From: Octopus bimaculoides
Lineage: Eukaryota
Assembly: GCF_001194135.2 (NCBI RefSeq)
Contig: NC_068985.1
Span: 122,029,396-122,093,395 of the forward strand
DNA length: 64,000 nt
Direction of reading: 5' to 3'
Part shown: in pieces, positions 5,572-64,000 of the stretch
Layout: each line of letters starts with the position of its first letter
Position numbering within the stretch: the stretch's first letter is position 1
Program-made: the position numbers and the translations under genes
The notes under the pieces: generated by a model
Told to the model about the DNA's origin: nothing
The model's database searches: none
What the model saw: the letters and a program-made list of their open reading frames with translations, nothing else

Positions 5572-5714
5572 NTATATATATATATATATATATATATATG
5601 TTTGTCCCCCCAACATCACTTGACAACTGATGGTGGTGTGTTTATGTCCCTGTAACTTAGCAGTTCGGCAACAGAGACCAATAGTGGAAGTACTAGGCTT
5701 ACAAGGAATAAGTC

Positions 5715-5866
5715 TGAGTGGTTGGCGTTAGGAAGGGCATCCAGCTGTAGAAACTCTGCCAAATTAGATTGGAGCCTGGTGTAGCCATCCGGTTGCACCA
5801 GTCCTCAGTCAAATCGTCCAACCCATGCTAGCATGGAAAGCGGACGTTAAACGATGATGATGATGA
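5715..5866 (+). mobile_element. Family A retroposon 3' part, little diverged
   Basis: GAGTGGTTGGCGTTAGGAAGGGCATCC...GGACGTTAAACGATGATGATGATGAT. It is preceded by a fragment of a second SINE family at about 5600-5715. Confidence 0.85.
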
Positions 5867-45600: not shown

Positions 45601-48600
45601 ACCTTTCATCTTGACACCAAAGATGGTCATTTTCCTTCTAGCACTGACTTAAGCTGCTCGCAATAGATCTCTTTTGTTATCGTTTGGTTTGGGTTGGGTT
45701 TAAAAGTTCAAAGTGGACTAAACATTTCATATCCCACCAAACAGATAACAACACTTTACGTGGGAAAAGACATCCTTTAGTCTGAGGTGCTGGTATTTCT
45801 CCTTTCTCTACTCACTGTCTTTAGCATTTGACATTTTTATAGAGAACCCATTTCTCATCACCAGTCACTATTCAGTCCAAAAAAGGTTCATTCGTGAGAC
45901 ATAACAGCAAAGAAGAGCACACATTCACTCTCTGCATGTGATTAGATTTGGAAAGTTTTCAAGAAACCTATTGACTCAATTTATCAGTTTATCCTATCTC
46001 CCTCTGACTTTTAGTTCATGCAGTTGAAAAAAACCCACATAGTTTATGGGATGACCCAATACACACACACACGCACACACACACATGCACGCACGCACAT
46101 GTCTAATAACCTTAAGAAATGCTCATGGATTGAGCTGAACTCTAAAATTGGAATAGGAATGTGAGAAAGTGATGATTTTTAAAAAAAATGTAATTACTCG
46201 GAAGAAAGGAATCCTTTTCCTTTCTCACTGTAACTATATTGATTTTTAACTATCAGGAAGTTCCTAAAGAATTGAGTGTTTTGTTAAAGACAGTTAATTG
46301 TCAGCAATATATTTGAAGGGTTTTTTTTTTTTTTTGTTTCATGAAATTATATACATGTAATATTTAATGTTGAATTAAAAACTATAATTTAAACTTGTAA
46401 TTGAATTTATTTACAGGGAACCCAAAACTGATTACACTTACTCTGAGAGGTAAGTTTTTTCCTCTTTATTTTAAAGATAATTTTATCTTTAACATGTAAT
46501 AAAATATTTTATTATGATTGTAAAACCATTTATCTATTCAGAGACAGTTGAAGTGACCCTGTCATGAATTAATCACAATCAAAGGTCATCTAAAACACAG
46601 TAGAGATAAAGGTCTCTAGGGAATTCATGACATTCATGTTAGGAAGTGACATAGGTGAATTCAAATATCTTGTCTCCAATGATGCAACAGTACTACTGTG
46701 AATATGGCATAAGAGTGGTGATATTGCATAAATTTAATGATGGTAAAATCAAAGCTATTGCACATGCATCGAGAGTTCTGTTACCCACAGAAAGAAACTA
46801 CAGCCAGATTGAAAAAGAGGCGTTATCATTAATCTTCACAGTTAAAAAAAATTCCGTAAATTCTTACATGGGAGGAAGTTTACACTGCAAACGGACCACC
46901 GACTGTTATTGTCTATTTTTGGTTCGAGGAAGGGTATACCCATGCACTCAGCAAACCACTTACAGTGCTGGGAGACTACTCTGTTGAACTACGATTTTCA
47001 GATGGAGTTTTTGCCATCAATGAAAATGGGACACGCAGACGGGTTGTCTAGGCTGATTCCAAAATATGAGGAACCTTTTGAAGACACGGTGATTGCATCG
47101 TTAAAACTAGAAAAGGAACTGAAGAACATTTTGTGCAATGTAGTACGTGGTTTGCGGTAACGCTGGAAGAAATTAAATTGAAATCGGAAAATGATAGGTT
47201 TATAAATAAGATTAAAAATATGTTGTGTAACACAAAAAATATAAAGGAGCGGGACGTAGGTTCAAAGTACTATTCAGTATGTGATGAGGTATTATTATAC
47301 GCACAAAGTGTGGTAATACCTGAAATACTGCAAAACAGAGTATTAAAAGATTTTCATGTTGGACATCCGCGGATTGTCCGGATGAAAAGCCTTATGAGAA
47401 GTTATGTTTATTGGCCAAATATGGACAAGCAAATTGAGAGACTGGTACAACAGTGTAGGGGTTACAGCCTTGGCCAAAAACAGATTCGGCATGGTCTAAA
47501 CTACATGTGGATTTCGCAGGACCATTAAATGGCTCCTATTATATCATTGTGGTGGACAGTTATTCCAAATGGCCTGAAGTGTGTAAATGTTCAAGGCCAA
47601 CCACAAGTGTGACGATTGACTTCTTGGAAGAACTGTTTGCTCGGTATGGAGTACCAGATACAATCGTGTCAGATAATGGGACACAATTCACAGCGAAGGA
47701 GTTCAAAAGATTCTGTAAGTTGGTTCAGATGAAGCATGTGTTAACTCCGCCATACCACCCAAGGTCAAATGGGTTAGCAAAAAGATTTGTCGACACATTC
47801 AAGAGAGCTTTAAGGAAGACTAGACGAGAAACCTTTGAAGATACAAATATGACAAAGTTTTTGCAGGTGTATAGAATGAAACCGAATCCAAATGCAGAGT
47901 CAGGTAGGTCACCCGCAGGTTTGATGTTTTCCAGAAAAATTCGTTCCATTTTTGAAAAATGGTTACCGAGCAGAAANNNNNNNNNNNNNNNNNNNNNNNN
48001 NNNNNNNNNNNNNNNNNNNNNNNNNNNNNNNNNNNNNNNNNNNNNNNNNNNNNNNNNNNNNNNNNNNNNNNNNNNNNNNNNNNNNNNNNNNNNTTAAACC
48101 AATTGAAAAAAAAAGATATACCAAAAACCAAAAGAGGCGAGAGGAACAAATGGATATATGGTATTTGTTCGACGTCCCACAACCACAAGCTAAAGCCTAA
48201 CTGACACGTAGGTCAAGTAGGAAGAGAACACCTGCAGAAATGATGGAAATAAATGCTAAGAGAAAAAGATATGCCAGTTTCTCACCGAGGAAATAAAATT
48301 GATAAATTCTTTTTTTTTTTTTTTGTTTTTTGAAAGAGAAAAAAAAATCAAAAGGGGGAGGTGTTGTGTCGACACCCCCAAGCGAAGAAGTAGGATGGCC
48401 CAAGACATATAAATAGAGGTAGTCTGGCCGTGGTAGGGTTGTTGAGTAGCAGTCGAGTAGAGATCATCCGAAGGTGCTAGATGGCAGTAGCTTGAGACAT
48501 AACAACTACACAAAGAATAAAATAAGTGTAATAAAAAGCAAGCACTGCTATGTTTAAAATGAACACCAATATTGAATCCTTTGCTTTGCTCTGTTTGATT

Positions 48601-50173
48601 CTGAAATATTTTCTTTATCATTCATAGTATGTTAAGTGCATTCTGTGTTATTTGGTCATTAAATATTCACATTGAGTTTCAAAAATTTTCGACAGCTGAA
48701 TTGTTTCAGTGTTATAAAATTTACCCCCCCCCCCCCCACTTTTTTGTGGGGTGGGGCAAAAGTGCAGGGATGTGGAAGGAGAATGCAGTGGCTATATTGA
48801 GAAAGGTGGCAGAGAGAAAAAGAAAGTATTTAGAGAGGGAGTCGGAACACAAGAGCAAGGAATTGGACAACTTTTCAACAGACAAAGAAATTTTCGGTCA
48901 AAGAGAAATTGCTTTATTTATAATTGTAGAAAATATATGAAAATTATCACAAATTGTTAGTGCTTGATGGTGAACTGGGGAGAGCTGCTGCAAAATGACA
49001 AGAAACCAAGAAGAAATAGAAGCAAGGTCTTGGGTTAAAGGAATAACTGAGACAAGACAAAATGTAGCAGAAGAAAATGAAGTAATGTTTGGAGTAAAAA
49101 GAATTACTGGAGGAAGACAAATAAACCCCATCATTTTTTAGGGTACTAAACTAGTTTAGTAATGTATATAAGTCTTATATATAAAAATATATCAAACAGA
49201 ATATAATCATCTTTTAATGTGTCTTCCCTGCTGGCACGGATTAGATGGTTTGATAGGATCTGGTGAGTCATGCTTCAGTGTCTACTTTGGAATTGTTTCT
49301 ACAGTTGAATACTTTTCCTAACACCAGCCACTTCACAGAATGTACTGAGTGCTTTTTTTTTTATGGCACCAGCACTATTGTGGTTACTGTGAAACTCATA
49401 AGACAAAAGAACCTCCTCAACTGAGTAGGAGTAATGTAGAAAGTGGGGTAGCTTTCTATTGAGAAGTTAAAATATGAAAGAAGGATAAAATACTAGAATT
49501 CAACCCTTGCGACAGCTAGTGTTTGTTCTAAAAGTACATGAATTTTGCTTGCTTCAGTCTGTCTTACAAAACGGGCTCTATTTCCTATTCATTCATAAAT
49601 ATTTAGCTGGCCATCAATGTATTAAATTCAATACTTCAATATACATATATTAAAATTTGAAAATCTACTTTTTCTACATTAACATTTAAATTAGTAAAAA
49701 CAAAAATGATGAAAAGGAAGCATCTCTGTATCTATTATCATCATTAACAATTTCCTAAATGTGTTACTTAAATTCTGTTTTCATGTGAATAATTGTTTTT
49801 TTTCTTTTTATTTCTTTTTAGTAAGAGCTATACTGTGAAATGTGATTCAAGCTGCAGAAGCCCAAATATGTCACGTCGAAACCTTCATCGAAATGATCTC
49901 TCGGGGTATAGGGAATCCCCTGGGCAAACCCCTTCTTGCACTCATTGGTTAAGGTCTCGTGAAATATATTCAAATACTTCTCCTCATGAGGAATCTAGCA
50001 TCTCATTTTCCAGTTACCGTTCAGGTTGGTACAAAAATGTGCTTTGTTCATTTTATATATTTTTTTATTCACTTTCTAAGTTCTGGTCAATTTGAACGTG
50101 GTATCAATATTCTTCATCTCTTGTTTGTGAGAGTATGCATTTTTTTAAAGTTACAAAAAATTTATTTTTTTTA

Positions 50174-50242
<69 letters not shown>

Positions 50243-53200
50243 CTTGTTTGACAAGAAGTTAGACTTTAAGTCAATCATAAGTAAGCTTTTGAAAAAAACT
50301 TTTCATATGTACATTGTGAAATCTGATGGTGATCACTTTGGGACAGTGTCTTAGATAACATTATGCAGAATACATAGCAATATCCTAAGTAGGATACTAA
50401 TCCTGATGATAATTGATTATTATAAGTAGTTTCCATAAGTGTGTATATACACATGCATGCGTGCACACAAACTCTTTACTTTCAAGTTCGTTAAACATTC
50501 TGTTACTATGCAGGTTTTCAATTGAAAAACTCACCATAGCAAAAACTTAATCATAAGCTTGAGTCATGTAAACTTTGATACATACACTGAGCACCTTTTT
50601 TCTCTTGTTTGTATATTTATATGCACATAAATAAACTGGTACATTTTAATGTTTATATGAAATAAAGCTTGTTAGCTACAAAGCGAAAGTAAAGAAGGGA
50701 AAATCCTGTAACAGCAACAGTACAATTATTCTGGATTAACAATATTCACATACTCTAAGGAATAAGCTTGCTTGATGTGTTTTTTAGCAAGTACACTCAA
50801 AATAATGAGATAGCTTGTTAGGACATTAGTATTTTTCTTTGATGGCATGAAAAGATGAGATCTGTTGGTAATTAAAGACTACACTTACAGAATGATATTG
50901 AACTTAGAGCAATCAACAAAACTGCTTAAAAATTATCATAATCATTTTACATTGGCCTTTCCACGATGGCATGGGTTGGAGAGATCTACTGTTTTATGGT
51001 TGGATGCCTTTATAATCTCTTATAACATGTAGAGGCACAATCCTCCTATTCTGAAAACCAGGATACACAGGATGTTCTCAAGTACAAGAAGTGTCAGACA
51101 AAAACTGCTTTTCTACTATCAATATTATCCTAATTGGATAACGTTTAATTAAACTTACACCAATAGAATCTGTGGTTAATAGGACTCTCATTCATAACAG
51201 TACTGACATGTCCTAGTGGGTATGGTCATAATCATAAGATAATGGGTTCAATTCTGGGTCTGGATGACACATTGTACCCTTTAGCAAGGCACTTCATTTC
51301 ATGTTGCTCAAGTATGAGCAGGTTACTAGTGCAACAAACACTCTCTCTCTCTTATATCCGGAATATTCCACTGGATCAAGGGTGAGGGGACCCAGAGTTT
51401 GTCTGTGTCTGCTTGTGACTACATATGCACCTAAAACAATTAGCAAAAGCATTGTACTACACTGCTGTGCTAAGTAGATCTATCTCCATACAAATATAGA
51501 CCCTCTCTTATAAAATAGCAATTTGTTTATTAACATTTGGCTGCTTCTCTGATGTATTTTATTCAAGTGGTGTTGGTTTTATTTGTTATTCAGATACTCT
51601 CCGTACTGAACTGTTTGATAGTGATCTTGACTTCACAACTCAAAGTCAGCAACAAGAGCAATGGGGAAAAGATGAACAGTGGAAACAAGAACTGGAAGAG
51701 CGGCGGAGACTTGAAGAGCAGCGGAGACTTGAAGAGCAGCGGAGACTTGAAGAGCAGCGGAGACTTGAAGAGCAGCGGACACTTGAAGAGCGGCGGAGAA
51801 TTGAAGAGCAGCGGAAACAGGAGGAAGAATTACGGCAAAGTTACTTATTTAATGTGGAATCATTAAGCAAAGAATCTCCAATGAAATCTCACACTAACAC
51901 CAAGACTATTTTGACAGTGAAAAACACTGTTACAGAGATATATGATGATGAATCTGATAAATATATAGAAAAGGGAATTCAAGAAGCAAATCTAAGTAAA
52001 GGTTCTCAGAGAGAAGAAGGAACATATGCATCAGGTGACTATACAAAAGAGAGCCGCACTAAACAAGTGACAACCAATATGTATGACTATGTCGATTCTG
52101 AGGATTTTTCAATTGGTAGTAGGAGTAGTGGTTACTTGAGTGATAAACACAAAGATTCCAGTACCCTGACTAAAACAAGCTACTACAGTGAAATGCATGC
52201 TAACTCTTCTGACAGGCCCCAGAACCATTACAGTCTCTGGAATATGGTGACTTCTTCATCTAACTATTTAACTACAAAATTCTCAGCTGCTGCAGCAGCA
52301 GTTGCGGGTGGAATGAGCAAAGTTGGAGGAATCTTTAGAAAGGAAGAGACAACAAATGTCAGGCATATGTATGGTGAGTAAATAGACTTATTGTTTAACT
52401 TTTATAATTCTTCAACAGTTGAATTAATAATTAGTCACAAACTGCATGCTTATTTTCTGGGCAGTGTCCAGTATTCTAATAATATGAACTATAATGCACA
52501 AAGAAACTTTTTGGGGGATAAAAAAGATGCATCTTAGCACTCATTATAGTTGTGTGCTTAGGTGTTTTAAAAAGAAATGTGTGAGTAGAAGGTAATACCT
52601 GTGATGTGATTTAATATATTTGTTAGAAGAGGTAGGATTTGACTTGTTTGAATGGTAAAGGGCAAAATATATATATGATCATTTTAAAGGCTTTTTACAA
52701 AGTGAGTTACAAAGATTGGCTTTCATTTTGAAGAATTATTTATGGTTAGCTTTAAAATAGCAAATGTTACAGAACAGAAGCAAGCTTCTTGCAAAAGAAG
52801 TTCATGGTTTAGTTTTGATTCTCATTTGGTCATTTCAATTCATTTACATTTCTAATGTCTTTGAATTAAAAAAAAGTCATGGATATCAGAAAATCTTGTC
52901 TAGGTTCCTGAAAGAATATAAGAAATGGATAATTGATTGTGCATAGGCACAGGCGTGATTGTGTAGTTAAGAAGCTCACTTTGCAATCATGTGGTTTTAA
53001 GGTCAGTTCCATTGTGCAACACTTGGCCAAGTGTCTTTTATTATAGCTTCAGGCTGACCAATGCCTTGTGAGTGAAATTGTTAGGTGGAAACTGTGTGGA
53101 AGCCCATTGTGTGTGTGTGTGTGTGTGTGTCTTTATGTTTGTCACCCCTCCATTGCTTGACAACCAGCATCAGTTTGTTTGGCTTCATAACAGCAATTTA

Positions 53201-56200
53201 GCAAAAGAGACTGATTAGAATAAGTATCAGACTTTTAAAAGAGTACTGTGGCAGTCTGTTCACTGAAACAAAAGCCTGGTCAACGTTTTTCAAGAAGCAG
53301 GCTGATTGAGACGTGGCTCACCGTCGAGTAGGTCCAGCTGCTAAACGAATTTAAGATAAGTTTTTGTTTAGGTCAGTCATGACTGACCTAAACTCTTAAA
53401 GGCAGTGCCCCAGTCTTGTGACTGCAACAGATAAAAGATAAAAGCACTTGATATCATTAGGATGGTATTTATGTTGTATTTGAATGAATAGTCATGTAAA
53501 AGTCTGTCAATATGTATAAAAATTGATTCTAAGTTTAGTGGATTTTAACTGTTTTGTTAATGCTCTTAATCTATCAAATTTTAACATTAAATTCTTCTTC
53601 TCTCTCTCTCTCTCTCTCTAGGTCTTGATTCAGATTCTGAGCTAGGTACTGTATTCATTTTCATTCTACAATTTTTTTGTTTTTCTATTTGAAAAAAAAA
53701 ATGTATACTCCTCATATTTTTAATGGTCTTCTGCTTTTTATCATGGGAAGCAGTGGTGAGAAAGAATTTGCAGATGCTGGACCTCACTGAGATGACAAGG
53801 GACCAGGACTGGTGATTTGCTGTACTTGAGAAGACACATCAAGCCAAGTAAAATCCATGCGGACAGGCGTGTCTTTTATAACCATGTCCCCAGTCCCTCT
53901 CCCAGCTGAGTGGTCTTTGCTTTGCAAGTGCCAGTGCTACATAAACATACCCAGCACACTGTAAAGTGGTTGGCATTAGGAAGGGCATCCAGCCATAGAA
54001 ACTATGCCAAAACAAACAATTGGGACCTGGACAGCTCCCTGACTGGCCAGCTCCTGTCAAACCATCATGAAATCCGACATACCAGCATGAAAAATGGATG
54101 TTAAACGATGATGCTGATGTATTTCAACCATAACATTTGGCTTAAAACTTTTGCTCTAAGTATTTGTTTTATGTTTTACCTGTATGTAAAAATCAAGGCA
54201 AATATGAGAACATTTTTAGAATATTGATTTTTCTGGTTCGTACAGAAAACAAGTTATGTTTTGTCTTTTTCTATTTTGATAACAACTCACCTAAGGCCAC
54301 CCTTGGTTTTATGATACAAATTTACTGTCTTCCCATCAAAATTTTATGTTCTAAACAAAACAATAATGACAAAGTTAATTGACTAAATTTTTCATTATTT
54401 TCAAGGTCATTTGAATCAATGGCAGTGTATTTCAATAGATATATGGTAACAAAAATGTTAAAGCTAAAATGATGCCTGTTATGAGCCACTCAGTGTCATA
54501 AGGCCCATGCTTAACTTCTGATTCAGTAACATCAAATGGCATGATGCTGTTTGAATATCTCATCATAGATAAGAAACCTGCAATTTTTGTAAACTCAGTA
54601 ACTGAAGTTATCTTTAACCCTTTAGCATTTAAATTAGCTGTATCTGGCCCAAATGTTCTACCAGTTTTATGTTTGAACTAGCTCCAACTGGTCTTTCATG
54701 CCTACCATACAATGTTATTCCAAAAATATATTATCACATATTGAAATCTTGAAGTGACATGATAATACAGGATTAATTCAAAATGATGTGAATAAATAAA
54801 ATATTATATTTGAAAAGGTAATCTAAATGCTGAAAGGTTGGCTAAAGCAAAAATGGATAGGACTTTCCACTTGGGATTTAGATGCCATATATAGATCATA
54901 GCATCAAATATTGTTCACAACCCTCACTTATTTCTAAGCAAGGTAATATATTTCCCCATAGCTAGACATGTTTCCGTAGAAAATTGGAAATGGACACCGC
55001 TTGTATGTTGGTTTCATTTGTTTACAACTGTTGTGCAGTGCAACATCAAGAAGACAAGGAGACACAAATATGCATGCACACACACACATGTATGTATGGA
55101 TGCATGCATGTTTGTAAAGAAGTTCACTTCATGACTATGTGGTCTTAGCAGGGCCAGTTCAAGGTACTGGCAACCGGGGTGCCAAGGAGGGTGTGACAAA
55201 GACAAGGAAATTTCCACAACTGTTAGCTTGTACATGCCAAAGTCCAGCTTGCTTGGGCCACCAGCAACCCTGGGGCTGGCCCTGGGTCTTAGGTTCAGTC
55301 CCACTGTGTGAAACCTTAGATAGGTGTCTTACTATTGCCTTGGGCTGGTCAATACTTTGTGAGTGAAACAGATTGATGAAACTACTCAGAAACCCATTAT
55401 GTATACATGGTTATGTGTGCATATAAATGTCATTTCTACTTCATGCGCAAGAAAAAAAATGGTATCAGTGTATTTACATTCCTCGTAAATATTACACTCT
55501 TTTCTGCTAAAAGCTACTATTGTTACCATAGTTTCTGAAATTTGAGGATGGAGGTTAGTTGATTACATCAACTTCAGTACTTGAGTGGTACTATGGTCTA
55601 TCAACTTCAAAAGGATGAAAGGCAAAGTTGACCTTAGTGGAATTTGAACTCAAAATGTAAAGCTGGAAAAAAAAATACTGCTAAGTATTTTTTCCAGCAT
55701 GCTAATGATTCTGTCTGCTCACTGCCTTTACAATTTTTATAAATCAATTTAACTTCTAAATAATTGTAATTTAAATGTTAAAAACAAAAGGAAACAATGA
55801 ACAAAGAGAAAAACATATTGTGTTGTTTGCTAAATGAGGCATGTACAAATGACCCAAATATGCAACATGGTTTCAGTTCTCAGTTTTAGGTATGTCACTA
55901 ATGTTTTTTTTAAATGACATGAACATTATTGGTTGAAGGCATTGAGCTTGTATAAAGAAATCTACTGTTTCTCAATTGAGACATGTGTTAGCATGAAGAT
56001 TTACTAATTTAAATGAATTCAGGGAGTGTTTCTCTCTGCATCATCCTTGCATAAATTCAATCCACTGCTGGACAAATGCCTCAGTATGTTCTCTCCACCA
56101 ACCACAGTCTGATGTTTTCCTCATCCATGTTTGGGTGCTGAAGAATTTAACAATGTCTCCATTCCAATACCTGCATGGTCTTCCCTTCCATTTTTCTGGA

Positions 56201-58955
56201 CCTGTTGTTCACTCTGTCAATTTGATATTCTATCTGTTGTCCTTTCTTCTAAACATATCACAAAAACCATTTTGGAAATTTTATTTTCCAGATAATATCA
56301 ATTAAATCTGTTGCCATTCTTATCCTGTTGTTTCACCACTTATCCATTTTGTTAATATTCAGCTTTCTCTTTTCTATGGCCCTTTGTGTTGCTCTTAATT
56401 TCTTTTCAATGCTCTTGTTGGTAGTCCATGTTTCTGATGCATACATAATGGTAAGCAGCACACACTGGTTGAAGACCTTTCTTTTTAGACATGTGGGCAA
56501 ATTACTGCTCATGATGTCATTCAATTTTCTTTGGTCTAATTTTATATCTCTTAATGTCTCCAAATTGTTGATTTTTTTTATTGGGATAACCAATTCCTTT
56601 TGGCTCTTTAGACTATATCATTGCAATTATTGCTCTTTTGGTTCTTCTGTTCTGTCATTTGATTTTCATATCTTTTCTTCCAGATTATAACAATGACACT
56701 GACAGATATATTGAAAAATCCCATGATTTCCATTACACGAGACCTAAGAACAGGAGAAGATTTCAGGACTCTGCACTTATCAAAGATAATCAAAAGAGTA
56801 AGGGAGATTTTTTTTTATTATTGTTATATTTTATTAGTATTTTACCTTGTTTCTCCTTTCCCTACTCACTGTCTTCAGCACTTGACATTTTTATAGAGAA
56901 CCCATTTCTCATCACCAGTCACTATTCAGTCCAAAAAAGGTTCATTCGTGAGATGTGACAGCAAAGAAGAGCACATATTCACTCTCGCACGCGAGTAGAC
57001 TTGGAAAGTTTGTGAGGAACTTATTGACCCAATTTACTGACTTTTCCGATGGCACTCAGGTGTTGAGGAATGGTTGAATGACCGAATCCAAGCTTCTCTA
57101 CTAGTTCCTCAACAGTTATAATGGGATTTTGTTCCACCAGGGTTTGCAGGACATCCACATCAAGCTCTATAGATCTTCCAGGAAGAGGCTCGTCTTCTAG
57201 GCTGTAGTTTCCGGTTCGGAATTTCTGGAACCATCGTTGACACTGGCTTGCGCTTATTGTCCGATCCTCATATACTGCATTAATATTCCTCGCACTTTTC
57301 GTTACATTGCTGCCTTTATTGAACTCATAAAGCAAAATATGCCGAATATGCTCCTTTGTCGCTTCCATTATAGCTTTGAAAAAATAACTGCTAAAATTAA
57401 ACTGCACTCTTTAAAATTTGCACTAAGAATAAGGTCAAGTTAGAATTACTACCAGCTTTTATAGCAAGTTGATGCAGGTAGTTTATCCTATCCTCCTCAA
57501 ACTTTTAGTTCATGCAGTTGAAAAAACTGCATTATTTATGGAATGACCCAATAGATATTTTCCAGATGATGATGATATATATTAACTAACCTTTTTGTTA
57601 CTGTATTTATTTCGAGATGCTCTGTGTTTCTTTCAATTAATTTTAAATATAACACAGAATTTTGTAAAATAACATCGGTATCATTAAGCTAGTGTTAGGA
57701 ACATAAATTGTGACTCAGGTTTGGTGGAAGATTTTAATTCAAAACTTATGAAAACAAGACATTTGTACTCAGAGCCGGGTTGGTAACGAAAGAGTTAAAT
57801 AGGTAAATGCAAGAAATTTTTGGAACATTGATTTTATGATTAAAGAAATCTAAATTTTCACTATTACTTTCTCACCATTTTTTTTATAACATTATCTAAA
57901 ATTAAGTCTTTTCTCATGCAATTTTAATATCCAATTCTTTAAAATAATTTTATTCTCAGGTAATCAAAGTTTTGTCACGAAATGTGTTACATCAGTTGTA
58001 GAATGGTTTGTTCCTTATGAAACATCTGCAGAATCACGAAGGTAGACACATTTCTATATTTTCCTGTTAGCTTTTATTTAAATACATGTGTGTGTAATCC
58101 TTGCATGTTAACTGGCTTGTAACTTTTAGTGCTTTCACTAAAAATGTTACATTGGTAAATATGTTTAGAAACTGACAAAACAAATGTCAGTCTATTATAA
58201 AATCTTTTATGGAAAATTCAACAATTCCAAAAATCTGCATAAAATCTGTCATCATTTTTGCATGTGTTTCTCAAGCTGGCATGCATTGAGCTGGTCTTTG
58301 CAATTTGAGTCAGTTTTTATTCAGAGCTACTTCATTCATTACAGTGGGTGGTTTTCCTATCACCAGCCACTTTACAGAGTGTGCTGGGTGCATAAAATCA
58401 TGGCATGAGCATTTGAGAAGTTGTCAAATTCTCTGGTGAGATAGAGCCAAAGGCATCTCTTGACCCTACACTTTCTTTACTCATTTATAAACCACACGGG
58501 TCTTCAGTGAGACAGAACTAAAAGAATCCCTCAACCTTAAGTTATATCTCTGGTTGCTTACCAATCACTCTAAGAGTGCACCAGGTGCATTTCATTGTGG
58601 CACCAACTCAGAAAGGTTTGCTTTGTACACATTAAATATAAAGCATACTCACTACATGTAGAAAATAGAGATAATATATACATGTATGTTTCTGTGTGTA
58701 TCAACATATGTATTTATTCACTCATGTATGTATATGTGTGTGAGTACATGCACAAATGAATAAATACATATGTTGACACACCCACATATGTTCCATGCTG
58801 GTGCTACATAAAAAACACCCAGTACATTCTGTAAAGTGGTTGACGTTTGGAAGGACATCTAACTGTAGAAACCATGCCAAAACAGATAACTGGAGCCTGG
58901 TGCAGTTCTCTAGCTTGCCAGCATGCTAAAAGGACATTAAATGATGATGATCTCT

Positions 58956-58995
<40 letters not shown>

Positions 58996-60331
58996 AAACA
59001 TCAATATCAGTATCTAGTTTAACCACTTGTTTTTTACTTTCAGCAGAAGTCGTCGCTGGCTTTGTTGCTGCTGCCTACCACTGTTGTTGCTGTTCCTTTT
59101 ACCTCTTCTCCTGGCTGCATTATGGCCAGTCGGTTAGTATATGTTACGTTTTAGAATAAGTTTAATTCCATATTAATATTTTCTATTGACATTAATGTTG
59201 ACTATACGCTGATACAGTTGTCCTACAAAATAAACTATACAATTAAAGACCTTACATCTAGTGATACCCATGTCTTGAAATGCATAATCAGACCACTCGT
59301 TTGATTCCTATCCTTGAGTGTAGGCATATATGTTCTAATGACAATGATAATACTCTGTTTAACTGTTAATTTCCTCTAGCTCACTTTTTACAACTGTATT
59401 TCTAAGAATAGACACAGTCCTTTATGTTTCACTTAATTTTTTAAATAATCAAGAATGTTGGTGGGATTCATTAAAATAACTTTCTTTAAATCTGAATGGT
59501 GTTTAGCAAAAATGGTTCATACATAAACTTATAATGAAAGGCTTAAATTAATATCCAAACCTTTCAAAATGAATGTTTTTTTTTTGTGTGTTAGGATGAA
59601 GGGGGTCTCAAGCAGATTAGTATCACAAGAGTTAATAGTGGAAATCAGTCTGATCTAGCCTCATCAAGTATTTTCTGTGGGTCACAAATGATACTAAACT
59701 TCAGATTATTTCCTGACTTGTGTTTTATTGATACAACATCACAGTATTTGCATCAAATTCATCATGTCTCTTTCTAAGGCTACATATATACATGCTGTGT
59801 CATTCATTTATGCTACATGGGACTAATTTAAGTGACTGGAAATCCTCCTGACAAAACTAAGGAAGTCATTATTTACTGCTAACTTGTCTGTTGTAATTGT
59901 TAAGCAGATTAACATTAAGAATATTAGTTTTAAGTAATAGACTTAGGGAATTGTGTAGTACTAAACTACATTCATTACATGTAGGTTTGCCCACAGCTAG
60001 AATTCTATCAGCATCGACTTCATCTTTCACTCCTTGAGAATTAATAAAGTAAATATTAGTTAATAAACTGGAGTAAAATCCTATTGACTACATATTTCCT
60101 CACACCCAAGAAATTAGTCTCCTGGTTAACGAAAAATAATGAATATTATTTTTAATATACAAAATAAGCTCAAGCCAAACCAAGTTTATGGGCTGGTTTC
60201 AATTTCAAATTGCAGTTAATATGCTTCAAGTGCATTGCTTATGCCCTTGAAAATAAAGTCATGAACACCATGCAACAATTTTATTCTCCCTCTCTCTTTT
60301 TCTTCCTAAATTTGTAACCTTGTACCTCAAT

Positions 60332-60366
<35 letters not shown>

Positions 60367-62208
60367 CTTATTTCAGCTGGAGTTGCTGAAAAAAATTCCA
60401 CCTACTTCATCAATCGCTTCTTCATCCTGCCACTTTTGAGTAATAAATCAGAAGTAAGGAAAATTGATCTCTTTTGAATTTGTATTTCCTTTATTTTTTT
60501 CATTTATTTATCATCATTTAATGTCCGTTTTCCATGCTGGTATGGGTTGGGCAGTATTTATGTTTTTGTACATTTCATTTTATTAAGGGCTGCTACATTA
60601 CAGCAATAAATTTTTATTTCACTGGATTGGTCAAAAAAAAAATACTGGATATGTATTGAAATTGGTTTTACTGACCTATAAACTCTACCATTGTAAAAAT
60701 ACATAGACATTGCTATATTGACCAGTACAGAGGTTGAAACGGTAGCAGAAATGCTACCATTAAACAACTTTATCAGTAATTACTATAATATATTCAAAAT
60801 ATTATAGAAAGCTCAGATTATTAAATCTTTTAGTATTTTCATACAAGGAATATTATTTAATAACTATATTTTAAATGTTCTAGTGAGCCATAGGCTGAAA
60901 ATCATCAGAATTTTGTAATATTTTTTTCTAACTCACTCTGCCCTGAATTCAAATCCTGCCACGGTCATATTTGCTTTACATTCTTTTGGAATTAATAGAA
61001 AGTACCAATTCAGGGTATTGATTTAACAGATCTGTTACAGAGTTAAGCAAGGGGCTTTGTGGTATTTGTTCTGGGTCTTTGTATTCTGACAATACTGGCA
61101 TCCAGCTGCATCAGCCCAGGTCATATCTTCAGCAAGATTAAAGGGACCTCAATTCCATACTCAGCAGGATATACTAGATGCATTTTATCATGGCATCAGC
61201 ATTTGAGAGGAGAGAGAGCGTGATGGATAGCAAGAAGTGGATACATGGTGAGGGTGAATGATAAACGTTGCTATTAAATGACCAGGGGGAGAGAGAGAGA
61301 GTATGTGGGTTATATGTTTATCTTATGAGGTCCCCTAAATATATGCCTCAATACAAGTGACAGTAAGAGTGATAGGGATGAGAGAAGGGCAGGTCTCCTG
61401 TCGTTCTTAGTGATGCTAGTGGCATAGTATAATGAGACTGAAAAGAACAGAGAGTGATTGAGAAAGCAATAGAAAATTACTTTATCTATGAGGTCATCAG
61501 ATATTATCTTCAACCTGCAAAATGTAATCTTACCCTTATTTATTGTGTCACTAATTGAAGTTATCATTTGACATTTTCTTCTTTAGCAGCAAACTATAAC
61601 TCCATTAGCAGTTAGTACAACAAACCTGTCCCTTGAACGGCGGATCAGTGAATTGATGGTACAGCTGCAAACTACACAGGATAAGCAAAAAAGTCAACTA
61701 ACTCGTGCTGATGTTGAACTGATAGTCAAAGAACTCCTCTCAGGCAAATTATCAGGCTTATCTGGTGATCTTCACGAACAGAAATTGAAAACAACTGCTG
61801 AAATGGTGATAAATTTTTTTTCAAACATTAAAGGATATATCTTTTAAAATTAAAAATGTTATTTGTTTTTTATTAATTAACTTGCAACTTGTAGTTTTGT
61901 TTGATCCCACCTTCATAAATGGTGTAATGAACTTTTACAAATTAAATAATTAGTAACGATAAAAACGAAAGGTTTGACTTTTAATTTAACCTTTTCAACA
62001 GTTACCTTGATTTAACAAAGCTTTATCAAGATTTTCTTTCTGGATAATAACAAATAAAGGCAAAACAAAAGTGCAAAAGTCAATTTGCCTTTATGATTTT
62101 TTTTTTTTTACACATTTCGTTATCCGTGTTAATTTCCAGGAACAATTAAAACTCAACCAAGCTCAGACTATGGATGAAAGAATTGCACCTCTTATTGCTG
62201 AAGCTAAG
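15834..62208 (+). CDS. SUN1: SUN1/SUN2 (UNC-84)-like inner nuclear membrane LINC-complex protein; 5'/central portion, continuing beyond the window
   Basis: GT-AG exons join in frame: 15834-15895, 31908-32000, 37719-37802, 46417-46449, 49822-50024, 51594-52373, 53622-53645, 57960-58041, 59044-59132, 60377-60453, 61587-61805, 62140-62208. The product has [22 protein letters not shown]...SPNMSRRNL (compare human SUN1 HMYSPPQCVPENTGYTYALSSSY...SPRMSRRSL, quoted from memory), [12 protein letters not shown] (compare HFWGLDDDGDLKG), one Leu-rich TM helix and then a coiled-coil-like segment. The SUN domain is not in the window, so the symbol rests on the N-terminal motifs and topology. Confidence 0.8.
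18384..18659 (-). mobile_element. tRNA-derived SINE with intact Pol III boxes and a Meta/V-type central domain
   Basis: Minus strand has A box TAGCCCAGTGG (18637-18647), B box GGTTTCGATTCCC (18592-18604), body GCGATGGACTGGCATCCCGTCCAG...AGAAACCGGG and an A-rich tail. CpGs are retained. Confidence 0.8.
18667..18820. repeat. Near-perfect foldback palindrome (about 70-bp arms, (GATA)n loop)
   Basis: GTAAATTAATAACGGTAAAATTAATTTCTTCCAATTATCTCTTTACTTTTAGTGTCGCTAATAATTATCTA pairs with TAGATAATTATTAGCTACACTAAAAGTAAAGGAGAGATAATTGGAAGAAATTAATTTTACAGTATTAATTTAC with few mismatches or bulges. Confidence 0.9.
25730..26070 (+). mobile_element. Family C SINE (GTGGTAAGAAG...GGTTCAGTCCCACTG...CAAGTGTCTTCT...AAACAAGTAAAAGA); related copies near 23030-23090 (-), 28060-28170 (-), 39520-39690, 52945-53440, 55270-55420 and 62490-62640
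   Basis: tRNA-like head with a GGTTCAATTCC B box, a shared body with internal (TG)n, and a shared tail across copies. Confidence 0.8.
28541..29409 (-). mobile_element. Internally deleted mariner transposon
   Basis: About 28-bp TIRs (CAAGGTGGTATCAAAAAGTTCCTGGACTA and TAGTCCAAGAACCTTTTCATACCACCTTG), TA on the left. Minus strand encodes [23 protein letters not shown]...[16 protein letters not shown] (HTH) and [14 protein letters not shown]...[19 protein letters not shown] (C-terminus), with stops and a central deletion. Confidence 0.9.
31908..32000 (+). CDS. SUN1: SUN gene exon ([30 protein letters not shown]), phase 2-2
   Basis: Acceptor cttttgtttcag, donor CT|gtaagt, 93 nt open in the required frame. 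Confidence 0.65.
34293..34319 (+). other. Candidate 27-nt microexon (non-coding or poison in the SUN frame)
   Basis: Acceptor tttttcttctag and donor CAG|gtaatt. In phase 2 it contains an in-frame TGA. Confidence 0.3.
34676..34749 (+). CDS. Candidate alternative exon giving an alternative start [13 protein letters not shown](R)
   Basis: ATG at 34709 is open to a strong CAG|gtaaca donor in phase 2, in frame with downstream SUN exons. The acceptor is uncertain (34675 or 34687). Confidence 0.35.
37719..37802 (+). CDS. SUN1: SUN gene exon ([27 protein letters not shown]), phase 2-2
   Basis: Acceptor ctcctcttccctcag, donor ATG|gtaggt, 84 nt open. Supplies the YxxPxxxP half of the SUN1 N-terminal motif. 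Confidence 0.6.
41770..42052 (+). mobile_element. Family A retroposon copy; other copies at 53815-54118 (+), 58790-58951 (+), 49215-49400 (-) and 63703-64000 (-)
   Basis: GTGGTTGGTGTTTGGAAGGGCATCCAGCTGTAAAAAC...GGACGTTAAATGATGATGATGATG. Confidence 0.85.
42640..43310. repeat. Unclassified CpG-retaining, purine-rich interspersed-repeat-like segment (possibly Penelope-like non-coding end); similar composition at 33230-33800
   Basis: Flanked by TA microsatellite, locally CpG-rich inside a CpG-poor intron, with GA-rich tracts. No protein motif recognised. Confidence 0.3.
45308..46059 (-). mobile_element. Mariner transposon, both TIRs present, N-terminal part deleted
   Basis: TIRs TAGGGTCATCTTTATAAATAATGTGGTTTTT and AAAAAACCCACATAGTTTATGGGATGACCCAA, TA-flanked. 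Minus strand reads [19 protein letters not shown]...[11 protein letters not shown]...[18 protein letters not shown]. Confidence 0.9.
46417..46449 (+). CDS. SUN1: SUN gene 33-nt exon ([10 protein letters not shown]), phase 2-2
   Basis: Acceptor ttatttacag, donor GAG|gtaagt. Contains the TDYTY core of the SUN1 N-terminal motif. Confidence 0.85.
46655..48300 (+). mobile_element. Ty3/Gypsy (K02A2.6-like) pol 3' fragment: RNase H, H2C2 zinc-binding domain and integrase; frameshifted
   Basis: [25 protein letters not shown] and GHADGLSRL (RNase H), [21 protein letters not shown]...QCRG (H2C2), [24 protein letters not shown]...VSDNGTQFT...[18 protein letters not shown] (rve), split across three frames. 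Contains the N gap at 47977-48093. Confidence 0.95.
48350..48693 (+). mobile_element. Polypurine tract and probable 3' LTR of the Gypsy element
   Basis: AAAAGGGGGAGG (48350-48361) is immediately followed by TGTTGTG at 48362. TATAAATA at 48408, AATAAA at 48516 and 48530. The right CA end is uncertain (about 48670 or 48693). Confidence 0.7.
49822..50024 (+). CDS. SUN1: SUN gene exon ([21 protein letters not shown]...SSYRS), phase 2-1
   Basis: Long T-rich acceptor, donor CAG|gttggt, SPxMSRRxL motif. Its phase change reconciles the flanking exons. Confidence 0.85.
51594..52373 (+). CDS. SUN1: SUN gene 780-nt exon: EEQRRL repeats plus Ser/Thr-rich nucleoplasmic region, phase 1-1
   Basis: Acceptor atttgttattcag, donor ATG|gtgagt, fully open (includes ORF 51854-52381). 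Confidence 0.9.
51695..51820 (+). repeat. Coding minisatellite, 7 x 18 bp (GAAGAGCAGCGGAGACTT)
   Basis: Translates [42 protein letters not shown] in the exon frame. Confidence 0.95.
53622..53645 (+). CDS. SUN1: SUN gene 24-nt microexon (GLDSDSEL), phase 1-1
   Basis: (CT)n tract plus AG acceptor, donor TAG|gtactg. In frame, and completes the [12 protein letters not shown] motif. Confidence 0.75.
   Translation, partial: VLIQILS
54614..54839. mobile_element. TTAA-flanked (piggyBac-type) MITE; partial copies near 24030-24188 and 29415-29560
   Basis: Starts TTAACCCTTTAGCATT and shares its interior with the copy at 63438-63666. The right end is degenerate. Confidence 0.75.
56040..56620 (-). mobile_element. 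RTE-type LINE 3' fragment
   Basis: ORF 56333-56593 contains [39 protein letters not shown], typical of the RTE ORF2 C-terminal region. An EAFVQQW-like end lies near 56060-56090. Confidence 0.85.
56845..57551 (-). mobile_element. Mariner transposon, 5' TIR and N-terminal half, C-terminal half missing
   Basis: TIR TTGGGTCATTCCATAAATAATGCAGTTTTT with TA. ORF 57021-57407 [15 protein letters not shown]...[16 protein letters not shown] (HTH), then *VPHKL and [10 protein letters not shown]. Shares 72 identical bp with the 45.3-46.1 kb copy. Confidence 0.9.
57587..57798. mobile_element. Second TTAA-type MITE family copy
   Basis: Imperfect TIRs TAACCTTTTTGTTAC and GGTAACGAAAGAGTTAA. Confidence 0.55.
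57960..58041 (+). CDS. SUN1: SUN gene exon ([26 protein letters not shown]), phase 1-2
   Basis: Acceptor ttttattctcag, donor AAG|gtagac, open frame. Confidence 0.85.
59044..59132 (+). CDS. SUN1: SUN gene transmembrane exon ([30 protein letters not shown]), phase 2-1
   Basis: Acceptor tttttactttcag, donor TCG|gttagt. A basic stretch precedes about 20 hydrophobic residues, indicating a type II TM. Confidence 0.9.
60377..60453 (+). CDS. SUN1: SUN gene exon ([25 protein letters not shown]), phase 1-0
   Basis: Poly-T acceptor, donor GAA|gtaagg. Two N-x-S/T sequons fit a luminal location. Confidence 0.85.
61587..61805 (+). CDS. SUN1: SUN gene luminal coiled-coil exon ([28 protein letters not shown]...KTTAEM), phase 0-0
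   Basis: Acceptor ttttcttctttag, donor ATG|gtgata. Overlaps ORF 61653-61847. Confidence 0.85.
62140..62208 (+). CDS. SUN1: SUN gene exon ([23 protein letters not shown]), phase 0-0
   Basis: Acceptor aatttccag, donor AAG|gtatta, open helical sequence. Confidence 0.85.
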
Positions 62209-63666: not shown

Positions 63667-64000
63667 TATCTATGTTTTCACAGTCATGCCGCTGCATATT
63701 TCATCATCATCATCATCATCATCATCGTTTAACGTCCGCCTTCCATGCTAGTATGGGTTGGATGATTTGACTGAGGACTGGTGAAACCGGATGGCAATAC
63801 CAGGCTCCAATCTAAATTTGACAGTTTCTACAGCTGGATGCCCTTCCTAACGCCAACCACTCAGAGAGTGTAGTGGGTGCTTTTACGTGTCACTCGCACG
63901 AAAACGGCCACACTCGAAATGGTGTCTTTTATGTGCCACCCGCACAAACCAATCCAGGGGCACTGGCAACGATCTCACTCGAAAATCCTACAGGAGCCAG

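What the first reader, a model, noticed from the sequence alone, without database searches (positions are those of the whole stretch)
51695..51838. Minisatellite-encoded EE(Q/R)RRL array: a putative single alpha-helix spacer in the nucleoplasmic domain of a SUN protein
Seen: seven near-identical 18-bp units encoding 42 residues, about 70% E/R/K, continuing EEELRQ. The low synonymous divergence indicates recent expansion. Known: alternating E and R/K blocks with i to i+3/4 salt bridges form stable charged single alpha-helices (myosin VI/X, caldesmon, INCENP) that act as extensible springs, and SUN proteins transmit force across the nuclear envelope. I do not recall such an array in vertebrate SUN1/2. 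Inference: a lineage-specific, length-variable mechanical element in a skippable symmetric exon. The Leu every sixth residue means a coiled coil is an alternative.
Basis: partly seen in the sequence, partly recalled or inferred. Interest (0 to 1): 0.7.

Follow-up and report, generated by a model that had tools for sequence, protein, structure and literature searches.

The report
Charged helix repeat in octopod SUN protein
A tandem 18-base repeat really does encode a run of EEQRRL units, predicted to form one long, stiff, charged helix, in the nuclear-side domain of an octopus SUN (nuclear-envelope bridge) protein; the array is shared in worn form with Argonauta but absent from other SUN proteins, so it is a lineage-specific example of a well-known structural motif, with its function still untested.

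Summary
Window 51691-51815 holds 6.9 copies of an 18-bp unit (93% match), and a degenerate eighth unit extends it to 51838. It reads ERRRLE-(EQRRLE)x3[18 protein letters not shown], which is 69% E/R/K.

The frame is fixed by an 11-exon gene model with canonical splice sites and consistent phases. The model is colinear with residues 23-621 of a 964-aa Argonauta hians protein that carries a Sad1_UNC (SUN) domain. The array lies 256 residues N-terminal to the transmembrane exon, so it is nucleoplasmic.

The exon is 51594-52373 (780 nt, phase 1-1) and runs 178 codons past the array into conserved motifs.

Argonauta has an orthologous but diverged array (4.9 copies, 74% match; unit pS 0.64-0.72, pN 0.16-0.24). 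The six core window units have pS = 0. The array is therefore old and constrained, and was recently amplified or homogenised in this lineage. Two other cephalopod-like SUN transcripts and 21 further SUN orthologs lack it.

A charged single alpha-helix is the best reading: 45 attractive versus 1 repulsive i+3/i+4 charge pairs, no hydrophobic seam, and AlphaFold pLDDT of 92-96 amid disorder. A canonical coiled coil is disfavoured. The main caveat is that the array is almost all Arg, and Arg-only designed helices aggregated. The spring or spacer function is inference.

The parts
51691..51838 (+). 18-bp coding tandem array. Seven good units lie at 51698-51823 in codon register, with degenerate flanking units. 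It encodes ELEERRRL(EEQRRL)3[24 protein letters not shown].
   Evidence: TRF gives period 18, 6.9 copies and 93% match. The 18-mer is found only here in the window.
51594..52373 (+). The exon that carries the array: 780 nt, 260 codons, phase 1 to phase 1. The acceptor is ttattcag and the donor is GTGAGT. After the array it encodes the cephalopod-conserved [24 protein letters not shown] motif and a polar region predicted to be disordered.
   Evidence: The frame is open for 293 codons, with chance about 2e-8 per frame. It aligns with P0015 residues 132-388. AF2 predicts a helix at exon residues 9-90 and pLDDT below 50 for the rest.
31908..32000 (+). Upstream coding exon (SHLKFNES...FLVHEWFDL). 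It is not the first exon of the gene.
   Evidence: tblastn with P0015; splice sites.
46417..46449 (+). 33-nt micro-exon encoding [10 protein letters not shown], an N-terminal motif conserved among SUN1-type proteins.
   Evidence: PKTDYTYS is nearly invariant in alignment A1.
49822..50024 (+). Exon encoding [22 protein letters not shown]...HWLRSRE...SSYRS. It holds the conserved PNMSRR motif. The ATG at 49868 is internal and is not the start codon.
53622..53645 (+). 24-nt micro-exon encoding (G)LDSDSEL, which contains the invariant YGLD motif.
56684..56797 (+). Nucleoplasmic exon ([19 protein letters not shown]...).
57960..58041 (+). Nucleoplasmic exon ([27 protein letters not shown]).
59044..59132 (+). 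Transmembrane exon ([29 protein letters not shown]). It places everything upstream on the nucleoplasmic side.
   Evidence: The CC.CLPLLLL motif is conserved in all 13 aligned SUN orthologues.
60377..60453 (+). First luminal exon ([26 protein letters not shown]).
61587..61805 (+). Luminal coiled-coil exon (QQTITPL...[13 protein letters not shown]...KLKTTAEM).
   Evidence: P0011 is 88% identical and comes from a related octopod.
62140..62208 (+). Luminal exon ([23 protein letters not shown]). It is the last exon found; the SUN domain lies beyond the window end.

Best explanation
The array is a coding minisatellite inside a 780-nt exon of an octopod SUN1/2-type inner-nuclear-membrane protein.

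Shown: the 48-residue core (ELEERRRL...EEELRQ) sits in the nucleoplasmic N-terminal domain. It lies between the conserved extreme N-terminal motifs ([21 protein letters not shown]) and a second conserved motif block, 256 residues before the membrane span.

Inferred from sequence and prediction: the hexad E-E-Q-R-R-L lets each Glu pair with an Arg 3 or 4 residues away in both directions, while Leu at every sixth residue winds round the helix in three stripes and forms no seam. The segment should therefore fold on its own into one long, isolated, salt-bridge-stabilised alpha-helix of the SAH or ER/K type. The core would be about 7 nm long, or 9-12 nm with its helical flanks, in an otherwise disordered domain.

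Shown by comparison: the array arose by slippage or unequal exchange of an 18-bp unit before the split of Argonauta from the window lineage. It was kept under purifying selection at the protein level, and its internal units were re-amplified or homogenised recently in the window lineage. Its length therefore differs between species (54 versus 44 residues between fixed anchors).

Inferred function, not shown: a semi-rigid spacer replaces the short polar linker found in other cephalopod-like SUN proteins. It would set the distance between the N-terminal module, which in mammals is the lamin A-binding region, and the rest of the nucleoplasmic domain.
For: Repeat:
- TRF finds 6.9 copies at 93% match.
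- The 18-mer occurs only at this locus in the window, with 0.03 matches expected by chance.

Frame and gene:
- The open frame is 293 codons long, with P about 2e-8.
- Eleven exons all have AG/GT sites and continuous phases, and the 594-aa product is colinear with P0015 residues 23-621.
- P0015 (Argonauta hians, 964 aa) and P0012 (a full-length transcript) carry PF07738 Sad1_UNC.
- P0015 reads straight through ...[20 protein letters not shown]..., which shows that the exon continues past the array.
- Sun1 is a type II inner nuclear membrane protein (PMC2064544 abstract).

Helix:
- The array has 45 attractive versus 1 repulsive i+3/i+4 charge pairs.
- My simplified Waggawagga-style score is 0.58-0.72 relative to EEEEKKK. 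The published cut-offs are 0.25-0.35 (PMC5812594).
- There are 0 hydrophobic networks, hydrophobic a/d occupancy is at most 0.21 in every heptad register, and Leu shows no periodicity at 100-105 degrees.
- AF2 on the single sequence gives pLDDT 95-98 across the array.
- AF2 with an alignment gives one helix at exon residues 9-90, with 10-residue block means of 87-96 for residues 21-80 and below 50 from residue 93 onward.

Evolution:
- The Argonauta exon has the same structure and an 18-bp array of 4.9 copies at 74% match.
- Unit divergence is pS 0.64-0.72 versus pN 0.16-0.24 in Argonauta, and pS 0.00 versus pN 0.088 in the window.
- None of 24 other SUN-family sequences has a comparable stretch; their best scores are 1-11, against 26 for the window and 15 for Argonauta.

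Placement:
- Lamin A binds SUN1 residues 1-138, the extreme N-terminus (PMC2823409).
Against: - No experiment or transcript from this species was available. Helicity, monomeric state and stiffness are predictions.
- AlphaFold cannot tell a single helix from a coiled-coil strand.
- My SAH score is a simplified re-implementation without the published weight matrices.
- The array has 14-15 Arg and 1 Lys. Wolny et al. (PMC5347031) found that Arg-rich de novo repeats (AEEERRR, AEEEKRR) aggregated rather than behaving as monomeric SAHs.
- SUN proteins are generally held to trimerise through their luminal coiled coil (my own knowledge, not checked here). Three arrays would then be held close together, and inter-helix contacts are conceivable.
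- The equivalent linker in other cephalopod-like SUNs is short, polar and unconserved, so the position tolerates almost anything.
- The recently added units (pS = 0) have had little time to be tested by selection.
- The Argonauta array is less SAH-like. Its simplified score reaches only 0.28 over 49 residues, which meets the 0.25 cut-off that PMC5812594 gives for that window but is well below the window's 0.58.
- The spacer function and any link to lamin binding are extrapolated from mammals.
Confidence: 0.6

Rival explanations
1. The array is a selectively near-neutral low-complexity expansion. Replication slippage amplified an 18-bp unit inside an intrinsically disordered, poorly conserved linker of the SUN nucleoplasmic domain. 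It may be helical, but it has no specific role, and its length drifts.
For: - The six core units have pS = 0, so the amplification is very recent.
- The corresponding linker in P0012, P0013 and P0014 is a short, unconserved N/S/H/Q-rich stretch, and non-cephalopod SUNs do not align there.
- EEQRRL-type repeats occur in many unrelated proteins, and these were the only hits when the repeat was left in the query.
- The rest of the exon is predicted to be disordered.
Against: - In Argonauta the units are close to saturation at synonymous sites (pS 0.64-0.72) but still keep E-Q-R-x-L-E (pN 0.16-0.24). This indicates long-term purifying selection on the pattern.
- The array and its flanks (QQQxQW ... 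[10 protein letters not shown]) are retained in two octopod lineages whose exon 2 proteins are only about 47% identical.
Confidence: 0.22
2. The array is a self-association element. It forms a coiled coil or another inter-helix bundle, for example between the three nucleoplasmic tails of a SUN trimer. The contacts would come from Leu and promiscuous Glu-Arg salt bridges, so it would not be a monomeric helix.
For: - There is a Leu or Ile every sixth residue.
- Arg-rich E/R designed repeats aggregated because Arg forms promiscuous salt bridges (PMC5347031).
- SAHs and coiled coils are commonly confused by predictors (PMC5347031 introduction).
- SUN proteins are generally held to be trimers (my own knowledge, not checked here), which would raise the local concentration.
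Against: - A 6-residue spacing puts Leu at 0, 240 and 120 degrees, so there is no hydrophobic seam.
- Hydrophobic a/d occupancy is 0.14-0.21 in all seven heptad registers.
- There are no i, i+3/4, i+7 hydrophobic networks.
- Leu periodicity has negligible power at 100-105 degrees, against peaks at 60 and 120 degrees.
- Only 17% of residues are hydrophobic.
Confidence: 0.1
3. The array is a binding helix: a charged single helix whose surface binds nucleic acid, chromatin or a lamina protein, in the way the CAF-1 KER helix binds DNA. On this reading, spacing is not its main role. This does not exclude the best explanation.
For: - The helix is nucleoplasmic and Arg-rich.
- The CAF-1 KER region is an SAH that binds DNA and acts as a spacer (PMC10335832).
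- SAH-containing yeast proteins are enriched for nuclear localisation and nucleic-acid binding (PMC5812594).
- SUN1 N-termini may contact chromatin (PMC2823409 discussion).
Against: - The net charge of the 48-residue core is about -2 (18 E against 15 R and 1 K in the 54-residue stretch).
- The hexad geometry spreads Arg in three stripes around the helix, so there is no continuous basic face (geometry derived).
- No partner is known.
Confidence: 0.08

Closest known systems
Charged single alpha-helices (SAH domains, or ER/K helices) such as those of myosin VI/VIIa/X, caldesmon, INCENP and the CAF-1 KER region
   Same: - About 70% of residues are E/R/K.
- The array has a dense network of i to i+3/i+4 Glu-Arg pairs.
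- It has no hydrophobic seam.
- At 48-80 residues it falls in the usual 40-200 range.
- It is predicted as an isolated helix flanked by disorder and lies between functional modules.
   Different: - It is built from a strict 6-residue repeat with a Leu and a Gln in each unit. It does not have the irregular or heptad-like E4K3 pattern.
- It is almost exclusively Arg, with an R:K ratio of about 15:1. Natural SAHs mix K and R, and Arg-only designs aggregated.
- It is encoded by a near-perfect DNA minisatellite.
- No biophysical data exist for it.
SUN1/SUN2 (UNC-84, klaroid) LINC-complex proteins
   Same: - The N-terminal motifs are conserved ([14 protein letters not shown]).
- There is a single membrane span with the CC.CLPLLLL motif, followed by a luminal coiled coil.
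- The exon-by-exon structure is colinear with an Argonauta protein that ends in a Sad1_UNC domain.
   Different: - No other SUN orthologue examined has a charged helical array in the nucleoplasmic domain. The set covered teleost SUN1, insect klaroid, Schistosoma, bivalves, Patella, a chiton and two cephalopod-like transcripts.
- The SUN domain of this gene lies outside the window.
The orthologous array in Argonauta hians LOC115212367-like protein (P0015; GCA_054771915.1)
   Same: - It occupies the same exon, the same phase and the same position between the QQQxQW and [10 protein letters not shown] anchors.
- It has the same 18-bp period and the same E-Q-R-x-L-E unit.
   Different: - Argonauta has 4.9 copies at 74% match, against 6.9 copies at 93% in the window.
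- It is 10 residues shorter.
- Its units are diverged at synonymous sites.
- It is less Arg-rich (M, N, V, Q and K substitutions) and scores lower for SAH character (15 against 26).
Coding minisatellites or tandem-repeat low-complexity regions in disordered linkers
   Same: - The copies lie head to tail with identical codon usage.
- Copy number differs between species.
- The array sits in a poorly conserved linker.
   Different: - The repeat pattern is maintained at the protein level over a long time in Argonauta.
- The array is predicted to be structured as a helix, not disordered.

Membership tests
SUN1/2-type LINC protein | C-terminal Sad1_UNC (SUN) domain, PF07738 | not testable with these tools
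   The gene runs off the window. The last exon found (62140-62208) aligns to P0015 residues 599-621 of 964. The orthologues P0015 and P0012 do carry PF07738, and the window product is colinear with P0015 over 11 exons.
SUN1/2-type LINC protein | Single transmembrane segment with the long N-terminal domain on the nucleoplasmic side (type II topology) | tested here: met
   Exon 59044-59132 encodes [27 protein letters not shown]. The motif is invariant or nearly invariant in 13 SUN orthologues. Type II topology is taken from the Sun1 literature (PMC2064544 abstract) and was not measured here.
SUN1/2-type LINC protein | Conserved N-terminal motifs of SUN1-type proteins (xTDYTYS / NTGYTYS and PNMSRR / PRMSRRSLRL) | tested here: met
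   [10 protein letters not shown] lies at 46417-46449 and [10 protein letters not shown] in exon 49822-50024. S59 and R60 are invariant, and K34-Y39 and P56-M58 are nearly invariant, in A1. The same motifs are visible in teleost SUN1 P0027-P0031.
Charged single alpha-helix (SAH / ER/K) | Sequence rich in E, R and K, with many i to i+3/i+4 opposite-charge pairs, scoring above the Waggawagga cut-offs (0.25-0.35) over at least 14-49 residues | tested here: met
   The array is 69% E/R/K and has 45 attractive versus 1 repulsive pair. The simplified normalised score is 0.72, 0.63, 0.62 and 0.58 for windows of 14, 21, 28 and 49 residues. The scoring scheme comes from PMC5812594, but the published weight matrices were not available, so this is an approximation.
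Charged single alpha-helix (SAH / ER/K) | No hydrophobic seam | tested here: met
   There are 0 hydrophobic i, i+3/4, i+6/7/8 networks, a/d occupancy is at most 0.21, and Leu periodicity peaks at 60, 120 and 180 degrees with negligible power at 100 degrees.
Charged single alpha-helix (SAH / ER/K) | Isolated helix without tertiary contacts | tested here: inconclusive
   AF2 predicts one long helix (10-residue block pLDDT means 92-98 across the array) while the remaining 170 or so residues of the exon score below 50. AF2 models a monomer only and cannot exclude oligomers.
Charged single alpha-helix (SAH / ER/K) | Monomeric, highly helical in solution over a range of salt and pH, with weakly cooperative melting | not testable with these tools
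   This needs CD and AUC or SEC-MALS on the peptide. Arg-rich de novo repeats aggregated (PMC5347031), and this array is about 15 R to 1 K.
Canonical coiled coil | Heptad (or hendecad) periodicity with hydrophobic a/d core positions | tested here: not met
   Hydrophobic residues recur every 6 positions. The best heptad register has 21% hydrophobic a/d positions, and there is no power near 103 degrees.
Coding minisatellite | Head-to-tail copies of a 10-100 bp unit with near-identity at the DNA level | tested here: met
Coding minisatellite | Copy-number variation | tested here: inconclusive
   Variation between species is shown: 6.9 versus 4.9 copies, and 54 versus 44 residues between conserved anchors. 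Variation within a species could not be tested, because no other sample of this species or of a close relative covering this exon was found.

The most novel reading that the evidence does not exclude
Octopods evolved a SUN-specific 'molecular ruler'. On this reading the array is a genetically length-tunable, Arg-based rigid helix whose copy number sets the reach of the lamina- or chromatin-binding N-terminus of the LINC complex from the inner nuclear membrane. Alternatively, it zips the three tails of a SUN trimer together through Glu-Arg contacts. Either way, slippage of an 18-bp unit would directly tune nuclear-envelope mechanics between species or individuals.
Probability: 0.15. Interest if true: 0.6.

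Novelty: new member of a known kind. Interest (0 to 1): 0.35.

Why it matters
SAH or ER/K helices are used in nature and in protein engineering as rulers and constant-force springs. LINC complexes carry force between the cytoskeleton and the lamina. I found no report of such a helix in the nucleoplasmic arm of a SUN protein: three literature searches returned nothing, and none of 23 non-octopod orthologues has one.

If the segment really is a stiff spacer, octopods offer a natural length series (about 5 worn units in Argonauta, 7-8 here). That series could test how the reach of the SUN N-terminus affects lamina coupling.

It is also a natural, almost pure Glu/Arg hexad repeat. This bears on the open question of why Arg-only designed SAHs aggregate while natural ones mix K and R.

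If the array is only a tolerated low-complexity expansion, the finding is an ordinary lineage-specific repeat in a disordered linker.

Tried and rejected
- **Homologue search with the repeat left in.** It returned only unrelated EEQRRL-rich proteins, so it was uninformative for orthology. It does show that the motif is common.
- **Search with the 178 residues after the array.** It found nothing. The word index missed the distant cephalopod hits that the exhaustive search later found.
- **Pfam on the exon products.** There was no family for the nucleoplasmic region and only a spurious sub-threshold SNARE hit.
- **PDB sequence search with the array.** The only match was a non-significant ribosomal L14 tail.
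- **My first assumption that the ATG at 49868 (MSRR...) was the start codon.** I rejected it. Conservation with P0012 and P0015 continues upstream, and two further upstream exons exist.
- **An exon end at 51838 (AA|GTTACT).** I rejected it. The donor is weak, the frame stays open, P0015 reads through, and the array itself contains no GT.
- **Direct joining of exon 51594-52373 to the TM exon.** I rejected it on phase. Three intervening exons were then found, including a 24-nt micro-exon.
- **Exact-sequence look-up of the exon ORF to find other samples of this species.** The sequence is not on record, so within-species copy number could not be examined.
- **Attempts to name the organisms behind the Logan runs SRR27666082, SRR9969973 and SRR11869384.** They failed. 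I call P0012, P0013 and P0014 'cephalopod-like' only because Argonauta is their best named hit and they share the RR(L/W)CCCCLP motif.
Full report
**1. The observation**

The sequence at 51691-51838 is a head-to-tail array of an 18-bp unit.
- Tandem Repeats Finder gives 51691-51815 with period 18, 6.9 copies, 93% matches and no indels.
- The unit GAGCAGCGGAGACTTGAA occurs six times with at most 2 mismatches. All copies are contiguous (51698-51805) and there are none elsewhere in the 64-kb window. Chance predicts 0.03 matches.
- In the third forward frame the seven units read [12 protein letters not shown] x3, [12 protein letters not shown] and EQRKQE. That is 42 residues at 69% E/R/K, followed by EELRQS.

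**2. Is it coding, and in that frame?**

The window is eukaryotic genomic DNA: 33% G+C, scaffold gaps, microsatellites and transposon relics.
- The EEQRRL frame is open for 293 codons. At a stop-triplet frequency of 0.059 this has a chance of about 2e-8 per frame.
- The exon is bounded by ttatttgttattcag| at 51594 and |GTGAGT after 52373. It is 780 nt long, phase 1 at both ends.
- It does not end at 51838. That GT sits in a poor donor context (AA|GTTACT), and the array itself contains no GT.

An exhaustive profile search with the non-repeat parts of the gene found three relatives. A follow-up search found a 964-aa protein of Argonauta hians ('uncharacterized protein LOC115212367 isoform X1') with a Sad1_UNC domain.

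Using it as a guide, I found eleven exons in the window: 31908-32000, 46417-46449, 49822-50024, 51594-52373, 53622-53645, 56684-56797, 57960-58041, 59044-59132, 60377-60453, 61587-61805 and 62140-62208. Every one has AG/GT boundaries, and the phases are continuous. The 594-residue product is colinear with Argonauta residues 23-621. The Argonauta protein reads ...[27 protein letters not shown]... without interruption. This independently fixes both the frame and the continuation of the exon.

**3. What gene is it?**

The product has the following features:
- the N-terminal motifs EPKTDYTYS and SPNMSRR, which are also seen in teleost SUN1 as NTGYTYS and PRMSRRSLRL;
- an invariant YGLD motif encoded by a 24-nt micro-exon;
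- a membrane span [21 protein letters not shown];
- a luminal coiled-coil region.

Its full-length relatives P0012, P0014 and P0015 end in a SUN domain. The SUN domain of this gene itself lies beyond position 64000, so family membership rests on orthology rather than on the domain.

SUN1 is a type II inner-nuclear-membrane protein (PMC2064544). The array ends 256 residues N-terminal to the membrane span, so it is nucleoplasmic.

**4. Evolutionary history**

The Argonauta exon has the same boundaries and phase. At the same place, between the anchors QQQxQW and [10 protein letters not shown], it carries an 18-bp array of 4.9 copies at 74% match.

| Measure | Window | Argonauta |
|---|---|---|
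| Copies (TRF) | 6.9 | 4.9 |
| Match between copies | 93% | 74% |
| pS among units | 0.00 (six core units) | 0.64-0.72 |
| pN among units | 0.088 (six core units) | 0.16-0.24 |
| Residues between anchors | 54 | 44 |

Sources.

The Argonauta units are EQRMLE, EQRNLE, EQRRLV, EQQRLE and EQRKEK. They are close to saturation at synonymous sites yet keep the E-Q-R-x-L-E pattern. The array therefore predates the split of the two octopod lineages and has been under purifying selection at the protein level. In the window lineage the internal units were amplified or homogenised very recently.

Two other SUN sequences lack the array. P0012 is known only from an assembled transcript. P0014 is also an assembled transcript, and the genomic exon ORF P0013 appears to come from the same species. 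These are closest to Argonauta among all hits and share the CCCCLP motif, so they are presumably other cephalopods, but the species are unknown. In place of the array they have a polar linker of roughly 25-35 residues. None of the 21 further SUN orthologues from bivalves, Patella, a chiton, teleosts, insects and Schistosoma has any comparable stretch. 'Lineage-specific' is right; 'recent origin' is not.

**5. Structure**

The hexad geometry explains the behaviour.
- E1 pairs with R4 and R5, and E2 with R5.
- R4 pairs with E1' and E2' of the next unit, and R5 with E2'.
- That is six favourable pairs per six residues in both directions.

Measured values:
- The array has 45 attractive and 1 repulsive i+3/i+4 charge pairs.
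- A simplified re-implementation of the Waggawagga score, normalised to EEEEKKK, gives 0.58-0.72. The published cut-offs are 0.25-0.35 (PMC5812594).
- Leu at every sixth residue rotates by 240 degrees per unit. It therefore lies on three stripes and forms no seam.
- There are no hydrophobic networks, at most 21% hydrophobic a/d positions in any heptad register, and no periodicity near 100-103 degrees. A canonical coiled coil is therefore disfavoured.
- AlphaFold2 predicts a single uninterrupted helix. The 10-residue block mean pLDDT is 95-98 across the array from the single sequence and 92-96 with an alignment. In the aligned run the helix spans exon residues 9-90 and the remaining 170 or so residues of the exon fall below 50.

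This is the signature of an isolated helix in a disordered domain. The core would be about 7 nm long, or up to about 12 nm for the whole predicted helix.

There are three caveats.
- AlphaFold cannot exclude oligomers.
- My score lacks the published weights.
- The array is almost purely Arg (about 15 R to 1 K). Wolny et al. found that Arg increases helix stability, but that Arg-rich designs (AEEERRR) aggregated because Glu-Arg bridges are promiscuous (PMC5347031).

SUN proteins are generally held to be trimers (my own knowledge, not checked here). If so, inter-tail contacts cannot be dismissed.

**6. Function**

What is shown is placement. The helix separates the conserved extreme N-terminal motif cluster from a second conserved block ([24 protein letters not shown]) and from the membrane. 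In mouse SUN1 the extreme N-terminus (residues 1-138) binds lamin A, and more distal parts bind emerin and nesprin-2 (PMC2823409).

My best-supported mechanism is inferred, not demonstrated. I propose a semi-rigid spacer that fixes the separation of these modules, with a length that changes by 6-residue (about 0.9 nm) steps through slippage.

The rivals are:
- a tolerated low-complexity expansion with no role;
- self-association;
- a binding surface like the DNA-binding KER helix of CAF-1 (PMC10335832). The near-neutral net charge and the absence of a basic face argue against this last one.

The 'extensible spring that transmits force' idea is possible but has no evidence here.

**7. The 'skippable symmetric exon'**

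The exon is phase-symmetric (780 nt; 765 nt in Argonauta), and skipping it would keep the frame. Mammalian Sun1 does use alternative splicing of nucleoplasmic exons (PMC6853637). However, this exon is a third of the nucleoplasmic domain and contains conserved motifs. It is present in all three full-length orthologous transcripts or gene models available. No transcript data for this species could be reached.

**8. Comparison, novelty and verdict**

The element works like a known kind, an SAH or ER/K helix, which has been reported in roughly 4% of proteins (PMC5347031). It sits in a known protein family (SUN1/2).

What appears to be new is the combination. I found no report of an SAH in a SUN protein (searches returned nothing), and none of the 23 non-octopod orthologues has one. 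The sequence itself is already public in an unannotated Argonauta protein. I therefore rate it a new member of a known kind, of moderate interest.

Noticed in passing
window 46655-47525 (+): A decayed Ty3/gypsy-type retrotransposon pol lies here. RT_RNaseH (E 5e-11) and Integrase_H2C2 (E 7e-13) are spread over three shifted reading frames. It sits inside the SUN gene intron between micro-exon 46417-46449 and exon 49822-50024.
   Followed up: partly
window 57024-57410 (-) and 28603-28935 (-): There are Mos1/mariner transposase remnants. An HTH_48 domain (E 1e-21) lies in the intron between exons 56684-56797 and 57960-58041. A second fragment with a PYSPD-type motif lies at 28.6-28.9 kb. It has no significant Pfam hit and I recognised it by eye only.
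   Followed up: partly
window 53622-53645 (+): A 24-nt micro-exon encodes (G)LDSDSEL. Its acceptor tract is a (CT)n microsatellite. The Y-G-L-D motif it completes is invariant in all 13 aligned SUN orthologues. I know of no function for it.
   Followed up: partly
window 59044-59132 (+): There are four consecutive cysteines ([10 protein letters not shown]) at the nucleoplasmic edge of the membrane span. They are shared by the window, Argonauta, P0012 and P0014, whereas bivalves have CCLCLP. A possible acylation site; not examined.
   Followed up: no
window 247-293, 1365-1427, 5804-5866, 63713-63775; L004 about 35838-35901: A short dispersed repeat of about 60 bp is present in several copies in the window. 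It also occurs just downstream of the orthologous exon in Argonauta, at 78-85% identity. It is probably a SINE-like element shared by octopods.
   Followed up: no
window 50174-50241; 369-1055; 53108-53130: Microsatellites are present. (CT)34 lies 150 bp after the donor of exon 49822-50024, there is a long TA/CA-rich tract at the window start, and (TG)11.5 lies in an intron.
   Followed up: no
window 4005-4014, 4773-5572, 18881-18998, 20651-21386, 33199-33208, 47977-48093: Runs of N mark scaffold gaps, so the assembly is a draft. The copy number of a 126-bp near-perfect array in such an assembly should be confirmed with long reads.
   Followed up: no
L001 (Logan SRR11869384), aligned to window 61273-63309: A genomic contig from an unidentified related octopod is 82% identical to the window across exons and introns. 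It includes the two luminal exons, and P0011 is 88% identical at the protein level. The contig is too short to reach the array exon.
   Followed up: partly
window 49868: The ATG that begins MSRRNLH looks like a start codon but is internal. Conservation with the orthologues continues upstream ([11 protein letters not shown]), and two further upstream exons exist. At least one more 5' exon is expected, since Argonauta has one about 14 kb upstream, but I did not find it.
   Followed up: partly
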